The translations under genes and the position numbers were made by a program. From Pocillopora damicornis (taxonomy: Eukaryota): a DNA stretch of 64,000 bases. The stretch's first letter is position 1. The number at the start of each line of letters is the position of its first letter. The DNA is taken from contig NW_020843442.1 of assembly GCF_003704095.1 (NCBI RefSeq), forward strand, positions 310,001 through 374,000. Reading direction: 5' to 3'. Positions 1-14,342 of the stretch are shown in pieces. The notes below the pieces were generated by a model. That model made no database searches. It was given only the letters and a program-made list of their open reading frames with translations, and was not told the DNA's origin.

Positions 1-496
1 ATTGCCATGAGCTGACAACCAAAGAAAAAGAGAAGGGATGTCTACTAACAGGAGAGAGTTATGTCCAACTCTTTTTTATGTCAAAGGTATGGACAACTTT
101 CTTTCCTGCAGACAAAAGGTGATTTGACACAACCAATCCCATCTGTTCTGTTTCTCAAAGGTCATATTCTTGCATGGGGTCTCTGCTTATTAGTAAGGAT
201 AAACAAAGTAAAAATCAAATTTTCACTTTTAAAAGTGTCTGCATCTGCTTATGTGAATGTGTACATATAAGAAGTGTTTGACTGGGAGGCAAAAACAGGA
301 ATTGAAAAAATTGTCTGTAAGCAGAACTACTGCCTGCTACCACAGTGTTTGTTAGCAGAGAGTCAATTGTACTTCAAAACCTTTTAAATTTTTTTCACAC
401 TAAATGCAATTAACATATGAAGTAACTCTTACCCTCATCCACCTCTGGTCTTGGCAGGTCACAAGAAGTAGGTGCTTTATTTTGTGTTGTCTTGCT
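1..496 (-). CDS. Candidate downstream alternative exons of the SOBP-like gene (496-433, plus an exon starting at 11 that runs off the window)
   Basis: Acceptor ...ctcacattcacag| opens phase-0 SKTTQNKAPTSCDLPRPEVDE+G, which ends at a GTAAGA donor (432). A strong polypyrimidine acceptor cttctctttttctttggttgtcag| at 12 continues in phase 1 (AHGN...). The exon is phase-compatible with the exon-4 donor at 4318. No homology can be confirmed inside the window. Confidence 0.45.
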
Positions 497-909
497 CTGT
501 GAATGTGAGTCAACAAGAAAACTGTTCACAATACTATTCACTTCCATTTCTCAGACTTCATTTAACCGAGTCAAGTATCACTTGACAAACTCACACATAT
601 TTGCAGAATGCTACTCTTTATCTTGTACCTACATGTAGATACATTTCCATTTTTCATTTCTTCCCTCCCCAAAAATTAATTTCTGCATGAAGCATAATCT
701 GCAACTGGAAATGCCACTGAGACTGTGTTTGCAGGATTCTTCATTCCCTTCAACATTGTAAGGCAAAAGTTCAAATACTGAAACACCAACATGTCTATCA
801 AGCAAAAAATTCTGTACTTTTCTTTTTGTCACCTCATCATGATAGATCAACGTGCAAAATGCCAGACAACAAGCTATTTTTGTCATCTTAAAACTTGCTA
901 ATAATTTCA

Positions 910-1113
910 ATCCCATCTCTTAAGTGAACAAGAATATTTCTTCCTTACAAAATCATTACAATAAAAAGCAGATAACTGATAAGAGTAAAGAAGAACATCA
1001 ACTAGGAGAATATTCATTGATCCAATACCATATTCTCCAAACTAACAGCAAAAGAATTGCATAACAGAAGGTAAAGAGAGTTACCAATGAGATCTTGGGA
1101 GGGAAAGGGTTAA
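910..1113. mobile_element. piggyBac-type MITE (family A), degenerate left end
   Basis: ~200 bp ending AAAGGGTTAA. It is the reverse-orientation homologue of the copies at 15331 and 50043. Confidence 0.65.
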
Positions 1114-1750
1114 AGGACATTGTTTCAACCCTGACTTTCTACTGGTAGACTAGCATGCAGCTCAAAGTACAGAAGACATAACGTTGTACTGTAACTCTTG
1201 TAAGTAAATAACTTGATAGACAATGGTGTCTACATGACAGGAAGGACAAAACACCACCAACATGGACTGATTGTGGTGAAAAGAGCTCAGAGAAAGACTA
1301 GAATGATGCACAAAAGGTGCCACACAAGTTCTCTCTGGATGTCTTCTTTTATTACAGGTTTGATTGTAAAAAGATAAACAAGGTTGCCCATGAAAAATAA
1401 AAAAGTTTGAAAAACTATATAATGAAATAAAATAAACAGGACTGAATATCTGACATTTGGGCCAAGACCTAACAGTTCTTTGTGAGAACTACCACTGAGT
1501 ATAATACAAGTCTTAGGTGTTCTTCATTCAAAGGAACCCTGCTCTCATCACCACTGTTAAATCAAGAATATCGATGCATGGATCATTCAATTTAGTATAT
1601 TTGTAGCTCTTTTCCTTATTTATTTTTTCTATGCTCCTGACAGGCTTTTTGGAGATAATTTACAAGAATAATTAGTGAAGTAAAATATATAACGGCCCTC
1701 TACTACCTTCTGATGCTTTAAGAATAGTGACATAATTCAGTACACTTGTA

Positions 1751-4700
1751 CTAAATTTTACTGTACATGTGTTTTTCTAAACCCTTTTGATCTCGCCAGC
1801 TATTGATGTACAACCAATAGTCTCTTTCCTCCTCTGCTGTTTGAGCCTCTTCAAATCTACGTTTGACCTTAAGCAGTTTCCTATTGCAAGCATCGCAAAT
1901 TATCAACTTAACAATCTGATCTGGAACAGTTGAGAATAGTGATGGAAACTTGACCCTGTTCAATGTCTTGACCTCTTTCTGCGAATTCTCTGGGATGTAT
2001 TTGTCACACATAAAACAAGTTGAGCAATTGCTGTTCTTAGAGCCAGATGATGCCAACTTATTACTGATGTCTTGGCCAGTCCATATCTTGATGTGTGCAA
2101 CATAGTCTCTGTCCTCTTCTGAGATACCTGCAGTCACATACCTATCACGTTGACGAGCCAATCTTTCGCAGCATGTCAAGCATCCTTTTAAAATGCCAAC
2201 ACTCTCAGGTAAATTACTAAAAAGTGTAGGGAATTTGCTTCTTCTGAGCTTCCCATGACGACTGTTTTTAAGTACTTGCTTTGAACAAATGTAACAATCA
2301 AACAAAAGCTCTGATGTGTCTCTGAGTTCTGTGCTGCCATGAGCTGTAGTTGACTGCAATGCTGCCTTGTTCTCTACAGAACTAACAGGATTGTGATTTT
2401 TTATGGTAGAATCAGAAGCTGTGGAGGAACTATTTGTCACCAGAAGTTTCCAGCTTAACTTCCCACCATCCAGTTTGTTGTCATCAGTGACTTCTACATG
2501 AGATACATTGGTAGCCTCCTTTGGGTGCAAGTCTGCTGACAAGCCTGATTTGGAAGCTTTCAAAGTGTGGTGGCATTTTTGGCAAACAGCAGCCTGATAG
2601 AGCCAGTCGGGATGGCTTCCAAATAAATGAGGATGTTCCACACGGAAAACAACTTCTGGTTTCTGATAAAAGTATTCTGAACACATGATACAGTTCCAGA
2701 ACTTAAAGACCATATTTGTCTTGCCTGAGTTGTTCACAACTGGTAGGGAGGCCACAACACAGTACACTCCTTTGATGTTAGGAGGCTTGGCAAGGAAATG
2801 CGGGGCCTGGGAAAAGGAGAACAGAGGTTCAAATTACTGGCTGCAGCTGCAGGGACTTCCAATTACAATTTGCCACATGGGAGGGGTAGGTCAACAATGC
2901 CTTTATTACAATGAATGTGATGCATGGAATTGAAAATAGTCTGATGGCCTAAATTGGGTACTTGGAGGGCAAAAGGAATAAGATAATTGTAGGGTTAGAT
3001 TTCAAACTTATAAAGTACAGCTGCAACCAACAACATTGTCTACTTTCAAAATAATGCATTTGTGCTCTCTGACTGTATTAAAACAAACCAGGCATTGCAA
3101 ACAAAGCACTGCTATGTACAAGTAAGCTACACATTGGGACTCAAGACATTTGGAAAACTTTTGCCAAAATTTCCTAATTATGCATCAGTTTCATCACTAC
3201 TGTAACACAAAAAACCCTTGTCAAATGGTATTTTAGACAATATTTTAAACTTTGACAAACCCAACATTAGAAGACTGAAACAATCTTTTTGAACCCTTAA
3301 TAAACATTGCAGAAGTTCAAAAATTTTCTGAGAGTGCCAGGTAAATATCCTTGAAATTTCAAAAGTGTCTACCTCTTTGCATTTTGTATCCATGAAAATC
3401 TTTTTCAATCAATTTAGTTTCCATTACAATTTTTTTTTCCACCAAAGAACTCTCCTTGCTTCTGAATACAATTCTCTTATCTGTTAACATTTTGAAAGAG
3501 ACAATGTTGTTTATTTTCAAACCTCTGTTCTCAGGAATACCAGTGCAGTGAAGGAAGTGTTTCAAAAAGAAGAAATGGGACAAAATTCAGAGAAACTGAA
3601 TGTTGCAGAACAGTCTGTCACATAAGTTTAACAACGCACTTCCAATTGAGAGACATACAGTCTCCTGCGTATAACAAACTTCAGTATTATACACCCTATC
3701 ATGTCAATAGGTTAAATGAAGAAACTGCCAGCAATTTAAATTTTGGGCAAAGATTTTAGGATTATGTAAAGCTGTTCCATGTAGCTCACTGTTACATCAC
3801 AGACTGTTTGTCATGCAATGATCTTCCTGGTTCAGAGAATCTTTAAGCCAAGATTGCCTGCCATCCACAAATAAATACATGAAATCTGAAGAAAGACCAT
3901 GAAGACCAAGCAAACTATCCTTCAATGAGCTGCTGATTGTAAGTAATGTATCCTATGTGATGTATTGTAGGTAATATGTTGGAATAGAGTCTATGTATTG
4001 TAGCAGGGTTATAAGCTTCTAATTGTATGTAATGTATGTTGTTTTAAATAAAGATTTATGGATAAATATAAAAAGCAACCTATTTTACAACCATAAAATG
4101 TGATCAATAGTTGAAAACACAGGAGAAATTTAAACATTCACTAAGTAAGAGGCAAGGGTTATTCACTGTTTCCCACATGTCAAATATAAGGAAATGAATT
4201 CCAATAATTAGATAAAATTTTAAAAAAATTAAAACATCCCTTTGGTGAGAGAATGTTCAACTTGTTGCATATTTAAATGTTTTTACAGATAGCTACATAG
4301 ATTACAAAAAAAACTTACCAAAGCAGTTCCAGCTTTAGCACTTTCAGTTGCACCACTTGGTAAACTACAAAGCTCTGGTGTGGCTTGTGGCACTTCGGAC
4401 ATAGGAACTACCTATGGGACCATAACAGATCCAGTTAGAGAAGTGATAAGAAGGATTGATTTTTAACACTGAAAGATGATAAGACAATAATGTTTTAACA
4501 GGATACGAAAGTCAGTACATTTTTCACTTGGTCGAGAACTCAAGAAAGATGTTAAGATCAGCTTGATGTTTTCAAGGGCAACCGCTCAATGTCTATTAGG
4601 GTCAAACCTTGATTATCCTGACTGGTAGGGACTGAGTATAGTAATCAAAATAATAGAGTTTGGATAATGAAAATATGAATTTGCAAGTGTTTGAAGGTAA

Positions 4701-7154
4701 TGGGACCAGAGAAGCAAGTCAGGATATTAAAAAAAGAAAAAAGAAAAAAAAGATAAACTGAGCTTTTACTGTATAAGGTAAAACTTACTTCAGTTTTCAT
4801 AGCTGGCAAAGGCACTACACTTGGATTGCCACGATTTTCTTCACCTTTAATTGATTAAAATGAAAAGAATTATGGATGTATAAAGTATCTTTATTCATGT
4901 AACCAAACCTTAAATCAACCAGGAGCTGATTTCTGCCTTTTCTTTTTCTTTCTGATTATAGCAGGAACAGTGAGCTAACAAAATGTACTGTTCAACGTTC
5001 CTTTAAAATGATAAAAACCTAATAAATTTTAACAATTCTGTCATTAACCTTTTCACCCCTTAGAGTGAGTAGCATCCAATTTCTCCCTACAATATTACCC
5101 CTAAATCACACATTACAGGCATGAGAATAAAGGAAATGATCAACAACTAAAGAGAAAGAGGCTACCTATTATTCAACAAATTATCTTTTTTAGTACCTTT
5201 GCAAATGTATAGGGAGCAGCATGGAGAATATTCACAGACATATTAGGATTTAAAGGATTAACAAGTACCTGGTATTTGCACCACAACTGGAGCCTCATTG
5301 GGATTAAGAGTAACAGCAACAGGCTCAGCACTCTCAGTTTCTGTTGTCTCTGTTGACTTTACAAGAGCACTGTTGTTTTCTTGATCATCATCTTCATCAG
5401 GAAGTAACCTGATTTGAAGTTCCTCTACTGCTTCTCTTGTTATTTCTTCTTCATAACCAAACATGCCCAATAACTCATTCATTGTGCTTTTTGCATAATC
5501 CTAAAAAGAATGAAAACTCCAACATTTGGTGTTTGATTAAAGACAAAGTAATAGACTGGTAAACTTTTATCAAACAAAGTTAACAAAACCTAAAACCCTC
5601 TTTTAGATTACAAGGAGTCCTTCCTTTTTTGGCAAATTCTTTTGTGCAAGTGAAAAAAAATAAGTGAAAAAAAAAAAATAGATGTTAGTGTGTCACACTG
5701 AACTCTGGGAGAGAGGGGCACAAAAAGTGGGAACTATAGACTAGGCTGCTGATTTTGGCCTTGTGTAGCTGATTGAGAAGAGTTCTAAGAAGAATTCTAG
5801 GGATCTGCTGGCCAAACATCATCAGCAACACAGGCCTCTGGAGTGAGACCAACCAAACACCAGTAGAAGGTGAAATCAGAAGGCAAAGATGGAAATGGAT
5901 AAGGAGTACCCTTTGCAAACCAATATCAAGTGTCACAAGACAAGCCCTGTGCTGGAATCCCCAGGCTAAGAGAAAGAGAGGGCAACCAAGGAACACCTGG
6001 CATCATAACCTCAAGGTTGATGTCAGAAAGACCAGCCAAGTAGAAAGAATGACCCAGAACAGAGGTCTCTGGCAGACTGTTGTTGACAGCCTATAGCCCA
6101 AGAGGAACAATGGGTTGAGATAGATAGATAGTGGCTGAGTAATTTCCATGCCTCAAATTTGAATTTCAATTACACATAGCCTATGACATTCCTTATTGTG
6201 TGATTAAGTCATATCCTCATCATTAAATTAAGTCTAAATATTATGATGATCATCAAAATTTTCTTGTTCCCACCACTTCCTAGGGCCTAAAAGACTATGA
6301 AGAAGAAAGCTGCTTTTGTTAACAGTTAAGTGACAAAACATGTTTTCCAAAACTCTTTAGATACATAATCAGAATGTTATAACTAACCAACCAACCTTGA
6401 CCTTTCAATCGCTACTGGAAGTTACAAACGTTTATTTTTTTCCCTTGATTCATAACCCAAGAACAAGACAATTTGGTCTATAACTTACAGTAGAGACCTT
6501 GACCATGAGGTATAAGATGCCTGAGAAAACCAACATTAAACAGTTTATTCATAGCCCTTTGCATTAATATTCTGCTGAACTACAAGGAAGAACAAAGACG
6601 GTGATCGCACGCTCAACTAGCCTATTAATTAAATTTGTTTTTCTCAATCGATGAAATACGCTCGATTTAACATCAATATCTTCGATAGTGTGAAATTTTT
6701 CTTTCCTCTTCGAGCCTTACAAGGTCAACAAATACTTCATGCGTGATTAATTGGGAACATTTATTCTTTAATCGACAGAAGACATGATCGTGGGACCGAG
6801 AGGTCTGTGTAAACAAACCAGTAAAGGCACGATAAAGACACTTGACAAAGCAAGCAAAATTCAGCAAGATTTAGTGTTTAAGTTAATCAAAAGTTTTTTT
6901 GTGTGTGCAAAAGTGATAAAAAGTAGCTGAATGATTCAATAAAACTTAGGTTCCTACCATTTAGTAACAACATTTATGGTCATTTTAAGACTCTCTCATG
7001 AATAGATTCGCTAACAAGCTTTTCTTGTATGATACATTTTCAGACTCACTTAAAAAGTTAGGCACATCTTCGATTCCCTCACCTTCATTTCATCGTTGAA
7101 ATTCTCTCCATTCTGCTTTTCAGCGGCGCTTTCTGCTTCACTTTCTGTCGACAT
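1751..7154 (-). CDS. SOBP: Sine oculis-binding protein (SOBP)-like, isoform ending in a Cys-rich terminal exon (~502 aa, 5 exons)
   Basis: Exons (minus): 7154-7083, 5500-5269, 4844-4789, 4411-4319, 2806-1751. All are GT-AG and phase-consistent (0,1,0,0). The exon 1/2 junction reads FNDEMK|DYAKSTMNELLGMFGYEE, matching the conserved SOBP N-terminal box (INEEMK|NFAENTMNELLGWYGYD). The terminal exon contains ORF 1751..2767. AATAAA lies downstream at 1624-1619 and 1353-1348. Confidence 0.8.
5044..5261. mobile_element. piggyBac-type MITE (family B)
   Basis: TTAACCTTT...AAAGGATTAA termini. Internal sequence is shared with copies at 9720, 18168, 44862, 49000 and 56693. Confidence 0.7.
5750..6131 (+). 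mobile_element. 5'-truncated RTE-clade LINE 3' end in SOBP intron 1
   Basis: ORF 5773..6096 (LRRILGICWPNIISN...IRRQRWKWI...QALCWNPQAKRKRGQPRNTW) is the typical C-terminus of an RTE-type ORF. A short (GATA)n tail follows at ~6118-6131. Confidence 0.85.
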
Positions 7155-7159
7155 AGTGC

Positions 7160-7400
7160 TCGAAATCCAATATGGCCGCCAAATCAATAGCTGTATATTA
7201 ACACTGGAAATACGATTTAAGGAAAAGTCTTTTTAAAAAACGCGACCCCAATTAGAATTCCTCGCTCTTATCAGTTGGTAGTGGTCATCAAAGCAATATA
7301 CCACTCCAAGGATCCATCGTAGTCCACTCCATGCCTGCTATGATGCATTCAGAGTGATGCATTAAAACAAAATGGCGTACCATTTGGCGGGAAAGCTCTC
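7160..7400. promoter_or_regulatory. Putative SOBP-like promoter region with YY1- and E2F-like motifs
   Basis: ATGGCCGCC at ~7172-7180, AAAATGGCG at ~7369-7377 and TTTGGCGGGAAA at 7383-7394, directly upstream of the ATG at 7154. Confidence 0.4.
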
Positions 7401-10157: not shown

Positions 10158-13100
10158 CTAAACCTCATAGTGAAGCTTTGATAAAAAGTCTTCAACATTC
10201 AGATCTGATGGAAAATTGACGTTCCCTCCTTTGGTCTTGGATCTCTGAAACAGAAGAACACCGTAGGAAGAAATTAAACCGTCTTTGAGTATGATAGTAA
10301 ACGAAATCGTGAAAATACATTCTCAAATACAAATAAATCATACTGAGAAGTTCCAACGAGAAATTAAACATGATGTTTATAGAAAATGGCAAAAATGTCT
10401 GCCCTCTTTCGGCTTTTAAAACACTAGAGTTCAGATTTTTCTTTTTTCAACGGCATTGCTTAAACGAAAAGTGAGTATATCAGAGAGCAATTTTTGCATT
10501 CACCGAATAGTGATGTTTAAACTCGCTATCCTGTTCGCTCCTAGACCTCCTAAGATCAGCAGAAATGGTACAGTAGGAACTGTGAAATCACAGCAGTAAA
10601 GTGAGTGCCCGCCAAAGGACGATGTCAAACTTAGAATAATGAGGGGTTTGAGAGATACAGGTTTCTACTTCGTAGGAATACTTCACTCTGCTGATAAACA
10701 ATGAAGGGAGAGACTGCCTTGTCTCTTTTCTTTCCAGGTTCCCTTGCGCTTTACATCTCTACAGTCTTCATAGACTGTTCACGAATCTCCCAAACGCTGT
10801 CTAAAGTCGAGGAGAGCACGACTCCCCTGTTATTTAAATCGCTAGTCGTTCGAGGACCTGTTTTGCACTGAATATAGTTATGAACATAAACCTGCGTAAA
10901 AATGATCTAAAATCAATGTACGTTCTTTTTCTTAAAAAGTAACGTTGAGTAATAACTAAAAGATTTATTGCAACAAACCTTCGAAGGTCGAGATAATGAT
11001 CTTGTGTTCTTTTCCTTAAAACGAAACAATATGGTACATATCGGTAACATTCTTCATACTCAAATAAAGGAATTCTGTTCATTTGTGTTCTTAGTTTTGT
11101 GCTGTGTATCGTGTAATTAAATTGCAATAAAGTTTTAAATAAAGGTTTGACAGGAAAGAACAGCAGCGGAAAGGTAACAATAAAACAAAGAGAACAAAGA
11201 CGGTTCAGGGTAAAGAAAACTGTCTTAGATTAAAATCAGAAAACTAATTAACTTGACTTTTCCTCGTTTTCGCGGCCAGCGACTCTTGTGCTGCTTCAGG
11301 ATCGGGTTGCCTCGCAAATATGTAAACGGCCGTAAACGTGGAAAACGCGCCTGACCGAGTCTGGATTGGCTTTAGTTTGGCATCCGATTGGTTACTAAGG
11401 TGGCCCGAGTTTTCTACACCAACCACAAAGTCTGGTAAAACAAAACCAATTCAGTCTCTCTTACTTTCGATGTCATCTACCTACCTTTTCCCTCTCCAGT
11501 AAATCCCTTCGTCTTTTCCCTGACTGCGTTAATGAAACGCGTCCTTCTAATTCGCAATTCGATCCTGACTGTACCATCCCTGCGGAGTTTTCCTTCGTTA
11601 GATCACCACTAACCGGATTTGTTGTCAAAGAATCCGTACTTCCACTTTTGCTTTCCAGCGCCTCCGTATGAATGCCTGAGATAGGCACAGAACTCGTTAA
11701 ATCCTTCACAGAACCATTGTGAGGTATTTCATCGTTATGTTTTTCGTTTGCCTTTCCAGTGTTTCTCTGTGATTTTTCATTACTTTTAGATGCTAAATTT
11801 TGTTCTAAAGATTGTGGCTCAAGTGTTGACTCTGAAGCTAAGCGAGGCGTGGTGTTTGGTGCCCCCAGATTACTCTCTTCGGCAACCTGGTTTGTTTTTT
11901 GAGGTTCTTCAGAGTTCTTATGCTTTACTGCAAAAGTTTGTAACGAACTGGGAGCGTTTAAAGGGTGTGAAGCTTCAGAAGACGTCGTTGTAGTTGTAAT
12001 TTCTGCGTTGCTTGCCACCGATCCAGTCAGTGATGGATCGTTCACATTTCGTCCTGGACCAGTCATTGAATTTCGATCATTAGTAGAAGAGCCTGTGAAT
12101 TGTTCACGTAAAACACAAAGATCAGTTCCTATTAAAGACGTTGGAGTTAACGTGTTGAAAGCTTGTGACAACAGCGATGCACCGAATTTTTTTGCTGGGT
12201 TAGAGCGTGCAAGACTGGTGGGTAACGGAAGCTGATTAATGACTGAACTGGTGAGATTAGGAGAGGGAGCAGTGCTCCATGCGACTGGGTTCACCGGACT
12301 GTCCTGAACAGTTAGGGTACTCGACAAATGTTGGAAGGAGGGGGACGATCCAAAACCTTTGTTGCCAAGAGTGACTGTTGATGGTACATAACTTGAGGTA
12401 CTGGTAGGAAAATTGACGGTAGGAGGGACAGGGTGAAAGGTAGAACCGATGGGATTCATCAGAACAAGACTGTCGCTCTCTGGGCTCGGATGACTGGCAT
12501 GGGATTTGGGCTGTCTGGCTGCTGTGGTGGGGACACTGACAGGTGCGGTAAATGCATTAGCTACCAAGTTGGCAGATGTGACGGGTGAGTCGCCAGGCCT
12601 TGATCCTAGAGTGACGTGTGTAACTGCCGCTGGTGTTGGGCAAGGAGGGGGTCCGGCCGGGTAAGAAAGCAGAGGGGAGGATTCGGCCAAGTTACCATGC
12701 AAAGAGGAGGTTTCGGCTAGGTTACTATGCAAAGAGGAGATTCCCATCAGGTTACCAGGCAGGGGGGTTGATCTGACGACTGAATTGCAAACAGTGTCTG
12801 GAAATGCAGAGGGTGGGGTGGAAGAGCTCATAGCACTGGAACACCAAACGATAGGAGGAGCACTGGGTACAACATCAACGACAGAAGAGGAAATGAGATT
12901 CCTTTGCCTTGCGCAGTTGTTAAGTGATTGCGCAGCACATATGTTCATGCTTCTTGAAACAGTCGTGGGCGTCACAGACTGCACGTTACTGTTGCAAATG
13001 GCAGTACTGGATGAAGATGAAGATGACGAGTTACTAGCTTCCACACTTCGTTTTACGTTTCTTGCTTTTTTCTTATTTGAAGATGCTTTGTCGCTTTTAT

Positions 13101-14342
13101 CTGCTGTCATTTTCTGCCCAACGCTTTTGTTACTTTTATTGTTTCTCTTTCCACCCCTCTTGGTAGGCTCTGGTGTTCTTCCAAGATTAAAATCGAGCGC
13201 ACGAACATATGGAAAGGCTGACGTGATCAAACTGGGCCGATTGTAGGAAGAATTAACTCTGGACTCTCTGCTGTTTGTAGACCAATGGCCTTGAGTAGTC
13301 TCCTCGGGCGGGGTTTTGGGCAAATGTTTCTCAGTGCTCTGATAACTTACTGCGTGAACAGAGTGTGACTGTGTTTGAGAAGGAATCTTCTGCGGGCTGC
13401 CGGCCAGTAAGAGTAACGCATCAGTGACGATACTAGTGGCTGAAAAGAAAAATAGAAATAAATGAAAAAAATTAACTCGTGGGCGGGGGGAGGGGGAGGG
13501 GGGAGAGGGGTGGAGTTTTACGGATAAAGTAGAACATGGATGTGATTTCTATGAAATGGCTCACGTCAAGGCAGCCAGAAGTAATGTAGGGCTGCCTACC
13601 CGAGACTAACTCACAAGAGAGTTCCGATTGTTGACGCCTTAAAGTTTGTGGAAGAACTGTTGGAAGGGTGAACTATTGAAAGGTCCCAACTCAACTTTTC
13701 TTTCAGTCACCGTATTTACATGTAAATCATAAAACGGTCGCCAAAAGTATCATTCTTGTCGCGCGAAAAAAAAAAACTCCAACAAAAGAAGGGAATGTTT
13801 CCAAGATTACATGCTGTTTTAACGATCGCGTCAGAAATCGGAAGTAAGGGGGTGAAGTTGGACGTCAGTGTCACAAATTGGAGGATAGCGTTCGAGTTTG
13901 GACGGAATTGTCCGAAATCCAACGATGGTCGGACAAAAGAGATCATAATTTACCCTATCCGAATGGAAAAGTTACTCATCCCACACGTTAGGAAGGCCCA
14001 AGTTTCCGGCCCTTCAGTACCATCATTTGGTTTTCCTTATTCTACTGTGTTAGGCGCTTCTAAATTTTCACTTCTACATAAATATCCACACGAAACGACA
14101 AATACCTGATAGGTGCAAATCTGAAGTGGACGAGGAACTCGAGGTTAAGCTTTGGTGAATTGATGTTGGTGGTGAAATGGTGTTAACATTGGTTACCGAA
14201 TGAGATTGATTTTCTTCAGGAAAAGAGGAAACGTCGAGGGCACCTATTTAAAATAACAATAAAAAAGCTAATGACAATGCTAATGATGACAATACAGATA
14301 GTCATAAAAAATAATAAATGCAATAATAGTAATATTAATAAA

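What the first reader, a model, noticed from the sequence alone, without database searches (positions are those of the whole stretch)
1..7154. SOBP N-terminus apparently spliced to alternative 3' ends (zinc-finger cassette swap)
Seen: exons 1-4 carry the SOBP N-terminal box. The phase-0 donor at 4318 can join the 1056-bp terminal exon (2806-1751, own stop and AATAAA). It can also join a second phase-0 exon (496-433), which splices in phase to a strong acceptor at 12 and continues off-window. Established: SOBP family proteins normally carry FCS-type zinc fingers, and the terminal exon has no FCS motif. Inference: the canonical FCS-containing part may lie left of the window, and this locus may make two proteins with a shared N-terminus and different Zn-binding C-termini. 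That would resemble the Drosophila lola/mod(mdg4) architecture, which I do not know to be described for SOBP.
Basis: partly seen in the sequence, partly recalled or inferred. Interest (0 to 1): 0.75.

Follow-up and report, generated by a model that had tools for sequence, protein, structure and literature searches.

The report
Coral Scm gene with two endings
One coral gene, a relative of the Polycomb gene Scm rather than of SOBP, uses a shared front part with two different ends, so it encodes a full Scm-type protein and a shorter protein carrying three zinc-binding modules of an undescribed kind.

Summary
In RNA contigs from 4 of 4 runs (4 studies), the exon-4 donor (window 4319, minus strand) joins two acceptors. 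One is the 1056-nt coding terminal exon at 2806, which has its own stop, an AATAAA at 1353-1348 and a poly(A) tail near 1329. The other is the 64-nt exon 496-433.

Exon 496-433 does not use the acceptor at window 12. It joins an exon 565 nt left of the window (C77:309435-309199), which encodes an FCS-like finger.

The exons further downstream encode two MBT repeats, a SLED domain and a SAM domain. The gene is therefore an Scm/SCMH1-type Polycomb gene, not a SOBP orthologue.

NCBI models in two sea anemones, named SCMH1, carry the same N-terminal box. A Nematostella model joins the box to the three-module end. Both ends are therefore conserved between corals and anemones.

The three C4 modules are repeats of one another. 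They show no detectable relation to the gene's own FCS finger, and they resemble six modules in another gene of this genome.

This is an alternative last exon, not a lola-like array. The scan holds only one other note, on this same window (s1-775505), and none on other DNA.

The parts
7083..7154 (-). Exon 1, coding part: ATG at 7154-7152, 24 codons, donor GT. Its end (NGENFNDEMK) is the first half of the conserved N-terminal box.
   Evidence: The end resembles NGEENFKEEIK / NGEESFNEEIK of the anemone SCMH1 models and NGDENFSEDIK of Nematostella. No RNA joint was examined here because it lies outside L009.
5269..5500 (-). Exon 2 (232 nt): second half of the box (DYAKSTMNELLGMFGYEEE) plus an acidic, Ser/Thr-rich linker.
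   Evidence: tblastn of P0035, P0036, P0021 and P0034 all hit 5500-5267/5306. The loose end at L009 5846 in 4 of 4 runs is the reverse complement of this exon's end. It is the only copy in the genome.
4789..4844 (-). Exon 3 (56 nt).
   Evidence: Joint 4789->4411 in 4 of 4 runs, short side 61 letters. AG/GT borders.
4319..4411 (-). Exon 4 (93 nt, ends in phase 0). Its donor (GT 4318-4317) is the branch point for the two ends.
   Evidence: Two joints leave 4319 in 4 of 4 runs. In anemone and Nematostella proteins the sequences diverge after the equivalent '...AL'.
1330..2806 (-). Alternative terminal exon. CDS 2806-1751 (351 codons plus stop) encodes three C4 zinc-type modules; the 3'UTR runs to about 1330.
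   Evidence: Joint 4319->2806 in 4 of 4 runs. Contigs of 1415-1479 nt cover it. T22 loose end at window 1329 in X17. 28 homologues, and all 12 Cys are invariant in the 14 sequences aligned.
1348..1353 (-). AATAAA poly(A) signal of the alternative terminal exon, 19-24 nt before the observed 3' end.
   Evidence: Contig ends at window 1329-1391.
433..496 (-). Exon 5 of the long form (64 nt, phase 0 in, phase 1 out). It links exon 4 to the FCS-finger exon left of the window.
   Evidence: Joints 4319->496 and 433->C77:309435 lie on one contig in each of 4 runs. AG/GT borders.
1..432 (-). Part of intron 5, which ends at C77:309436. It contains the unused AG at 13-12.
   Evidence: Zero depth over window 1-400 in all 4 runs, and the joint skips it.

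Best explanation
The window's first 7.2 kb holds the 5' half of an Scm/SCMH1-family Polycomb gene on the minus strand. The whole gene spans about C77:301800-317154. Exons 1-4 encode a shared 151-residue N-terminus: a conserved box that spans the exon 1/2 border, followed by a low-complexity linker.

The transcript is completed in one of two ways after exon 4.

(a) The donor at 4319 is spliced to the acceptor at 2806, and the RNA is cleaved and polyadenylated near 1330. By arithmetic this gives a protein of 151 + 351 = 502 residues that ends in three C4 modules.

(b) That exon is skipped. 4319 is spliced to exon 496-433 and on to an FCS-like finger, two MBT repeats, a SLED domain and a SAM domain. 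This is the classical Scm architecture.

The choice is a competition between use of the internal acceptor plus poly(A) site and splicing across the 3.8-kb intron, i.e. an alternative last exon.

Shown: both joints, the poly(A) end, the domain content, and conservation of both forms in sea anemones.

Inferred: that both proteins are made. Also inferred: that the short form, which keeps the box but lacks every module that ties Scm to PRC1, PhoRC or chromatin, brings the same box partner to a different, zinc-module-mediated activity, or competes with the long form for that partner.
For: - RNA joints 4319->2806, 4319->496 and 433->C77:309435 appear in 4 of 4 runs from four studies, all with CT..AC ends on the + strand, which is GT..AG on the minus strand.
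- The reading frame is kept across all joints.
- Pfam hits on downstream exons: MBT 1.7e-26 and 2e-29, SLED 1.7e-25, and the start of SAM_2. The last exon holds the second half of the SAM.
- The anemone SCMH1 models P0035 and P0036 map collinearly from exon 2 through the FCS, MBT, SLED and SAM exons.
- The best solved relatives of P0036 are SCML2, fly Scm and SCMH1.
- P0035 and P0036 carry the box, 82% identical to the Actinostola box used as query.
- Nematostella P0021 (489 aa) is box plus three C4 modules.
- Actinostola P0034 holds the box, the C4 modules and the FCS finger in that order.
- Conservation of the terminal exon starts at its first codon (APHF...), 31 codons before its first Met.
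- Of the 18 listed variant places in its CDS, 11 are synonymous. Inside the modules 8 of 9 are synonymous. Both indels are 3 nt long.
Against: - All RNA evidence is from assembled contigs, not reads. Short sides at the branch are 28-31 letters, and no single molecule from exon 1 to either end was seen.
- The tool says contig depth cannot rank isoforms, so the roughly 2.4-2.8-fold higher depth of the long-form contig is only a hint.
- An internal start site for the Scm part cannot be excluded, because contigs drop rare forms.
- There is no protein-level evidence for either form.
- No coral protein carrying the box at 389-1438 aa is in the protein collection, so annotation support comes from anemones only.
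- The function of the box and of the C4 modules is unknown.
Confidence: 0.85

Rival explanations
1. Two separate genes lie head to tail: a box-plus-C4 gene that ends at about 1330, and an independent Scm gene with its own promoter. On this view the 4319->496 joint is read-through (a conjoined transcript) without biological meaning.
For: The C4 exon has its own poly(A) site upstream of exon 5. The old Nematostella model P0021 stands alone as box plus C4. No Nematostella Scm-type protein with the box was returned.
Against: The 4319->496->FCS contig is present in 4 of 4 runs, at higher contig depth than the C4 contig in each. No other joint into exon 496-433 or into the FCS exon was listed. The frame is kept. 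NCBI models of two anemones put the box on SCMH1. Exon 5 starts with neither an ATG nor any upstream first exon that could be seen.
Confidence: 0.07
2. The gene is a true SOBP orthologue, and the box plus FCS finger defines it. On this view the MBT/SLED/SAM exons belong to a neighbouring gene that is joined by mis-assembly of RNA contigs.
For: The box resembles the first conserved region of SOBP, which is also encoded in SOBP's exon 2. This likeness is recalled. The one supporting datum is a Xenopus guide RNA said to target that region, which reads LGWYG in one frame. An FCS-type finger follows the box, as it does in SOBP.
Against: The Pfam SOBP domain is absent from the genome above cut-off and from P0021 and P0034. 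It is also not among the precomputed domains of P0035 and P0036. The contig that joins exon 5 to the FCS exon runs on into the next exon in 4 of 4 runs (loose end at L009 199, whose reverse complement reads the start of the next open frame). The anemone models are continuous through to the SAM.
Confidence: 0.04
3. The C4 exon is a nested gene or an exonised insertion, and the short transcript is not translated into a working protein.
For: It is a single long exon with its own poly(A) signal inside an intron. It has no Pfam family and no fold match.
Against: There are 28 homologues down to 29% identity, with 12 invariant Cys in the 14 aligned. Conservation begins at the acceptor, before any Met. 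Synonymous changes are in excess inside the modules and the indels are in frame. AlphaFold models module 2 at pLDDT 92.8. The same junction is present in the Nematostella model.
Confidence: 0.04

Closest known systems
Drosophila Scm and human SCMH1/SCML2 (Polycomb accessory subunits)
   Same: The long form has two MBT repeats, SLED and a C-terminal SAM. Like fly Scm it has an N-terminal FCS-type finger. According to passages of the preprint 10.64898/2026.09.23.753712, mammalian SCMH1 and SCML2 lack that finger, and in flies it binds the Pcl Tudor domain (abstract).
   Different: It has an extra N-terminal box and an alternative last exon that replaces everything from the FCS finger onward with three C4 modules. 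That fly and human Scm lack the box is recalled, not tested.
NCBI gene models: SCMH1 of Exaiptasia diaphana (P0036) and Actinia tenebrosa (P0035); 'predicted protein' of Nematostella (P0021); hypothetical protein of Actinostola (P0034)
   Same: They have the same box, the same branch point after '...AL', and the same two kinds of C-terminus.
   Different: Each record shows only one of the two forms, or, in Actinostola, a fusion of both that looks mis-spliced. None of the names links the C4 protein to Scm.
SOBP (sine oculis-binding protein)
   Same: It has a conserved region encoded in exon 2 near the N-terminus, followed by FCS-type fingers (passages of 10.1101/2021.04.05.438472). The wording of the box is recalled.
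   Different: This gene has no SOBP Pfam domain and one finger rather than two. The long form is MBT-SLED-SAM. No protein named SOBP came up in the box searches.
Drosophila lola / mod(mdg4)
   Same: Shared 5' exons are joined to alternative 3' exons that encode different zinc-binding ends.
   Different: This locus has two ends only, no BTB domain, and cis-splicing within 16 kb. The properties of lola and mod(mdg4) are recalled, not tested.
Alternative last exon / intronic polyadenylation isoforms in general
   Same: One donor serves two acceptors, and the proximal exon carries its own stop and poly(A) site inside the intron.
   Different: Here the proximal exon is not a short truncating tail. 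It is a 351-codon conserved domain array.

Membership tests
Scm / SCMH1 family | Two MBT repeats | tested here: met
   PF02820 hits at L004 6507-6719 (E 1.7e-26) and 5361-5849 (E 2e-29). The anemone counterpart matches SCML2, Scm and SCMH1 MBT structures at E 5e-69 to 4e-67.
Scm / SCMH1 family | SLED domain | tested here: met
   PF12140 at E 1.7e-25. It is the best of 5 SLED matches in the genome.
Scm / SCMH1 family | C-terminal SAM (SPM) domain | tested here: met
   Pfam sees the first half only weakly (SAM_2, E 0.062, under cut-off). The second half is in the last exon. Both halves are 52-74% identical to the anemone SCMH1 SAM, which matches the fly Scm SAM at 8.5e-18.
Scm / SCMH1 family | N-terminal FCS zinc finger (fly type) | tested here: inconclusive
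   Cys spacing is C-x2-C-x19-C-x3-C-S-x2-C-F, with L or I where FCS has F. There is no Pfam hit at E <= 0.1 and no solved relative (best E 0.64).
Scm / SCMH1 family | One-to-one orthology with bilaterian Scm | not tested
   Three other loci in the genome carry SLED. No tree was built.
SOBP | SOBP domain (Pfam PF15279) | tested here: not met
   There is no hit on contig C77 and none over cut-off in the genome. There is none in P0021 or P0034.
SOBP | Two FCS fingers | tested here: not met
   One finger exon was found between exon 5 and the MBT exons. The short form has none.
SOBP | N-terminal conserved box | tested here: inconclusive
   No SOBP sequence could be obtained. Box searches returned only anthozoan proteins. 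Indirect hint only.
lola/mod(mdg4)-type loci | Common 5' exons with many alternative zinc-finger 3' exons | tested here: not met
   Only two ends were seen in the 6 kb laid. Introns further downstream were not examined with RNA.
Alternative last exon | One donor, two acceptors, and a proximal exon with its own poly(A) site | tested here: met
   both joints in 4 of 4 runs, and a T22 tail at window 1329 in 1 of 4 runs. AATAAA at 1353-1348.
FCS-type finger (for the C4 modules) | Detectable similarity to FCS fingers | tested here: not met
   hhalign of each module against the four FCS fingers gives probability 0.1%. Pfam zf-FLZ scores E 0.49, 10.3 bits against a cut-off of 23.4.

The most novel reading that the evidence does not exclude
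The anthozoan locus preserves an ancestral 'box + FCS finger' front end that in bilaterians is split between SOBP (box + FCS) and Scm (FCS + MBT-SLED-SAM). This would make SOBP and Scm sister lineages of one Polycomb-linked gene. The conserved short isoform would be a second, PRC1-independent output of that gene, built from a so far undescribed C4 zinc-module family. That family also forms a six-module protein elsewhere in the genome (C4204).
Probability: 0.15. Interest if true: 0.7.

Novelty: new variant of a known kind. Interest (0 to 1): 0.5.

Why it matters
Scm is described as the hub that ties PRC1, PhoRC and PRC2.1 together in flies (preprint 10.64898/2026.09.23.753712, passages). A version of the gene conserved between corals and sea anemones makes a second protein. 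That protein has the same N-terminus but lacks the FCS, MBT, SLED and SAM modules, which points to an unrecognised regulatory or competing arm of the Polycomb system in early-branching animals.

The locus also gives a concrete, testable link between SOBP, a deafness and intellectual-disability gene whose fingers resemble PRC1 fingers, and Scm. It shows that current anemone records annotate the two forms as unrelated proteins, or fuse them. Finally, the C4 module is a candidate new zinc-finger family with a confident predicted fold and no solved relative.

Tried and rejected
- **Acceptor at window 12.** Rejected: there is no RNA over window 1-400, and the 433 donor goes to C77:309435. By hand, a 22-nt exon from window 11 would also break the phase.
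- **SOBP identity.** Rejected on domain content.
- **Box homologues outside Anthozoa.** Three searches found none. HMMER over 1.84 billion representatives with exon 2 gave 7 hits at E <= 0.001: P0021 (Nematostella), P0034 (Actinostola) and five unnamed ORF fragments of 70-93 aa that share the box. A word-index search with residues 14-64 of P0034 gave 4 of 11 candidates at E <= 10. A search with residues 1-320 of P0036 gave 3 of 4440 candidates. A 25-residue motif is near the detection limit in libraries of this size, so this is not evidence of absence.
- **ESM Atlas.** Tried on the box and on modules 2-3. No usable hit: the best score was 0.89, to unnamed arthropod clusters, which is a lead only.
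- **Fold of the C4 end.** The whole-exon model was poor (pLDDT 60.4), with no Foldseek match (best E 6.2). The module-2 model was good (pLDDT 92.8), but the best Foldseek E was 2.9, to small ribosomal zinc-ribbon proteins.
- **Taxon of the C4-exon hits.** No names were on record.
- **Literature.** Searches found no paper on a cnidarian Scm isoform or on a SOBP-Scm link. Only listings were seen for these, except the two preprints, of which I read abstracts and passages. Supplements were not opened.
- **Sequences used in alignments.** A1 used 13 of the 28 hits plus the window exon. A2 used the same 13 plus P0034.
- **Joined model.** Isoform lengths are arithmetic only.
Full report
**What is in the sequence.**

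| Exon | Window coordinates | Length | Note |
|---|---|---|---|
| 1 | 7154-7083 | 72 nt | starts with ATG |
| 2 | 5500-5269 | 232 nt | |
| 3 | 4844-4789 | 56 nt | |
| 4 | 4411-4319 | 93 nt | ends in phase 0, donor GT 4318-4317 |
| Alternative terminal | 2806-1751 | 1056 nt | 351 codons plus stop |
| 5 | 496-433 | 64 nt | phase 0 in, phase 1 out |

Exons 1-4 add up to 453 nt, or 151 codons. The window is G000:C77:310001-374000, so the gene's continuation lies at lower contig coordinates. I fetched these as L004-L006, L008 and L009.

**RNA evidence.** The look-up of sequencing runs listed 22 runs that hold the 10-kb stretch, 10 of them on record as RNA. I laid four RNA runs from four studies (X1, X5, X9, X17; all Logan contigs) on L009, which equals window coordinates plus 1000.

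All four runs show one contig for each of these joints:
- window 4789->4411;
- window 4319->2806 (contig depth 55.9 / 51.8 / 7.3 / 14.9);
- window 4319->496 and, on the same contig, window 433->C77:309435 (depth 159 / 142 / 17.4 / 35.3).

All skipped stretches end CT..AC on the + strand, i.e. GT..AG on the minus strand. A loose end at L009 5846 in all four runs is the reverse complement of the end of exon 2.

The short side of the two joints at 4319 is 28-31 letters, just under the tool's 31-letter rule in 7 of 8 cases. My inference is that this is what a 31-mer graph leaves at a true branch. A 28-letter match is in any case unique within the stretch.

Window 1-400 has zero depth in all four runs, so the acceptor at 13-12 is not used.

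The contigs covering the terminal exon are 1415-1479 nt long and end at window 1329-1391. X17's contig carries 22 T before L009 2329, which is a poly(A) tail on the minus strand. An AATAAA sits at 1353-1348.

Contig depth cannot rank isoforms, as the tool warns. Still, in each run the depths of the two branches sum to roughly that of the exon 3-4 contig (233 / 154.9 / 27.6 / 47.2), and the long branch is about 2.4-2.8 times the short one. This is a hint only.

**What lies left of the window.**
- The exon reached from 433 (L004 9435-9199, 237 nt, AG/GT, phase 1 in and out) encodes C-x2-C-x19-C-x3-C-S-x2-C-F. This is an FCS-like finger with Leu where FCS has Phe.
- The loose end beyond it reads into the next open frame, at L004 8322-8672.
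- Further exons carry MBT (E 1.7e-26), MBT (2e-29), SLED (1.7e-25) and the first half of a SAM (E 0.062, under cut-off).
- The last exon holds the second half of the SAM and a stop near L004 1798.

This is the Scm architecture. The Pfam SOBP domain has no hit on this contig and none over cut-off in the genome.

**Relatives elsewhere.**
- The terminal exon has 28 homologues at E <= 0.001 among 915 candidates. Most are ORF calls that start at an internal Met.
- One of these is the Nematostella 'predicted protein' P0021 (489 aa). It begins with the same box and switches to APHFYAKPP... after '...EPAL', exactly as here.
- A HMMER scan of 1.84 billion representatives with exon 2 gave 7 hits at E <= 0.001. 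They are P0021, five unnamed ORF fragments of 70-93 aa that share the box, and the 707-aa Actinostola protein P0034.
- P0034 contains the box, the C4 modules and then an FCS finger, evidently through a mis-spliced model. The C4 exon therefore lies between the box exons and the finger exon in a sea anemone too.
- A word-index search with the box region of P0034 returned 4 of 11 candidates at E <= 10. Among them are 'polycomb protein SCMH1-like' of Actinia tenebrosa (P0035, 826 aa) and 'polycomb protein SCMH1' of Exaiptasia (P0036, 822 aa). Both carry MBT, SLED and SAM Pfam domains, and both have the box at 82% identity to the query.
- tblastn maps both collinearly onto exon 2, the finger exon, and the MBT, SLED and SAM exons of this locus.
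- The best solved relatives of P0036 are SCML2, fly Scm and SCMH1.

Both ends are therefore conserved between a coral and sea anemones. No coral protein with the box at 389-1438 aa is in the collection.

**The alternative end.**
- In an alignment of the window exon with 13 of the 28 hits, all 12 Cys of three CxxC...CxxC units are invariant. Conservation starts at the first codon, 31 codons before the first Met. The exon therefore cannot be a free-standing ORF.
- By hhalign the three units are repeats of each other: probabilities 99.1% for modules 2-3, 95.5% for 1-3 and 82.8% for 1-2. They show no detectable relation to the gene's own finger (0.1%).
- Pfam has no family for them. The best hits are under cut-off (CMI2B-like, E 0.017; zf-FLZ, E 0.49).
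- AlphaFold models module 2 with pLDDT 92.8 and pTM 0.79. The model has a zinc knuckle, three short strands and a short helix, with the second Cys pair at the start of a long helix. Foldseek finds no solved match (best E 2.9).
- The exon is single-copy in the genome. However, a 696-aa single ORF on contig C4204 holds six similar modules, with hhalign probabilities of 96.5% and 96.4% to modules 2 and 3.
- Of the 18 variant places that table 3 lists inside the CDS (30 further rows of that table were not shown), 11 are synonymous. Inside the modules 8 of 9 are synonymous, and outside them 3 of 9. The two indels are 3 nt long and lie in the linker. This fits purifying selection on the modules.

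**The SOBP question.** I could not obtain a SOBP sequence to test it. The only tool-derived hint comes from passages of the preprint 10.1101/2021.04.05.438472. [quoted passage not shown] One frame of that guide reads LGWYG, compared with LGMFGY here. The same passages say that SOBP's FCS fingers resemble those of PRC1 components. The box exon is single-copy in this genome. The gene is thus not a SOBP by its defining domain, but a deeper kinship between the SOBP and Scm front ends remains open.

**How it most likely works.** After exon 4 there is a choice between two outcomes:
- use of the acceptor at 2806 with cleavage near 1330, giving the short form (502 residues by arithmetic);
- splicing across 3.8 kb to exon 5, giving the long, Scm-type form.

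According to the preprint 10.64898/2026.09.23.753712 (abstract and passages), fly Scm is anchored through its SAM to Sfmbt and Ph and binds Pcl through its FCS finger. The short form lacks all of these parts but keeps the box. I infer that it either competes for the box's partner or delivers that partner to another activity through the C4 modules. This last step is inference only.

**Novelty and limits.** Alternative last exons are ordinary. Each form is already in public records of some anemone, but under unrelated names, and in one case the two are fused.

Four things appear not to be described, according to my four literature searches (listings only, apart from the two preprints):
- that the two forms are outputs of one Scm gene;
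- that this arrangement is conserved across corals and anemones;
- that cnidarian Scm carries this box;
- that the C4 module is a family of its own.

Supplements were not consulted.

Noticed in passing
L012 (G000:C4204:494994-498449), ORF 451-2541 +: A single 696-aa ORF holds six tandem modules of the form CxxC...[FY][FY]PFL...CxxC...L..QW..FE...ER.Y. hhalign relates them to modules 2 and 3 of the terminal exon (probabilities 96.5% and 96.4%). It has no Pfam family.
   Followed up: partly
window 916-1113: A short interspersed repeat of about 200 bp has at least 44 matches at 73-84% identity across the genome. RNA contig depth over it runs into the thousands (L009 bin 2001-2200). One X1-only odd joint (L009 672->2017, short side 21 letters) touches it.
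   Followed up: no
window 2884-3534: A low-depth joint has GT..AG on the + strand in X5 and X17 (depth 2.1 and 3.2). It suggests a spliced antisense transcript that overlaps the 5' end of the C4 exon.
   Followed up: no
window 7167-7180 (minus strand): GGCGGCCATATTGG lies 13 nt upstream of the start codon. It looks like a YY1/Pho-type GCCAT motif, which would be curious for a Polycomb gene. The motif is recalled and was not scored.
   Followed up: no
window 11473-13323 (minus strand): A 616-aa open frame rich in Ser, Thr and Pro lies in the G+C-rich zone (0.47) upstream of the gene, on the same strand. It is probably an exon of the neighbouring gene.
   Followed up: no
G000:C1114:177737-177934, C3372:54117-54323, C3439:436627-437195: Three further loci carry SLED domains over the Pfam cut-off, so the genome has other Scm-like or SLED-bearing genes.
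   Followed up: no
P0034 (Actinostola sp., NCBI hypothetical protein QZH41_010436): This public gene model leaves the C4 exon at '...KVK', passes through a low-complexity stretch and rejoins at the exon-5/FCS part. It appears to fuse the two alternative ends into one protein.
   Followed up: partly
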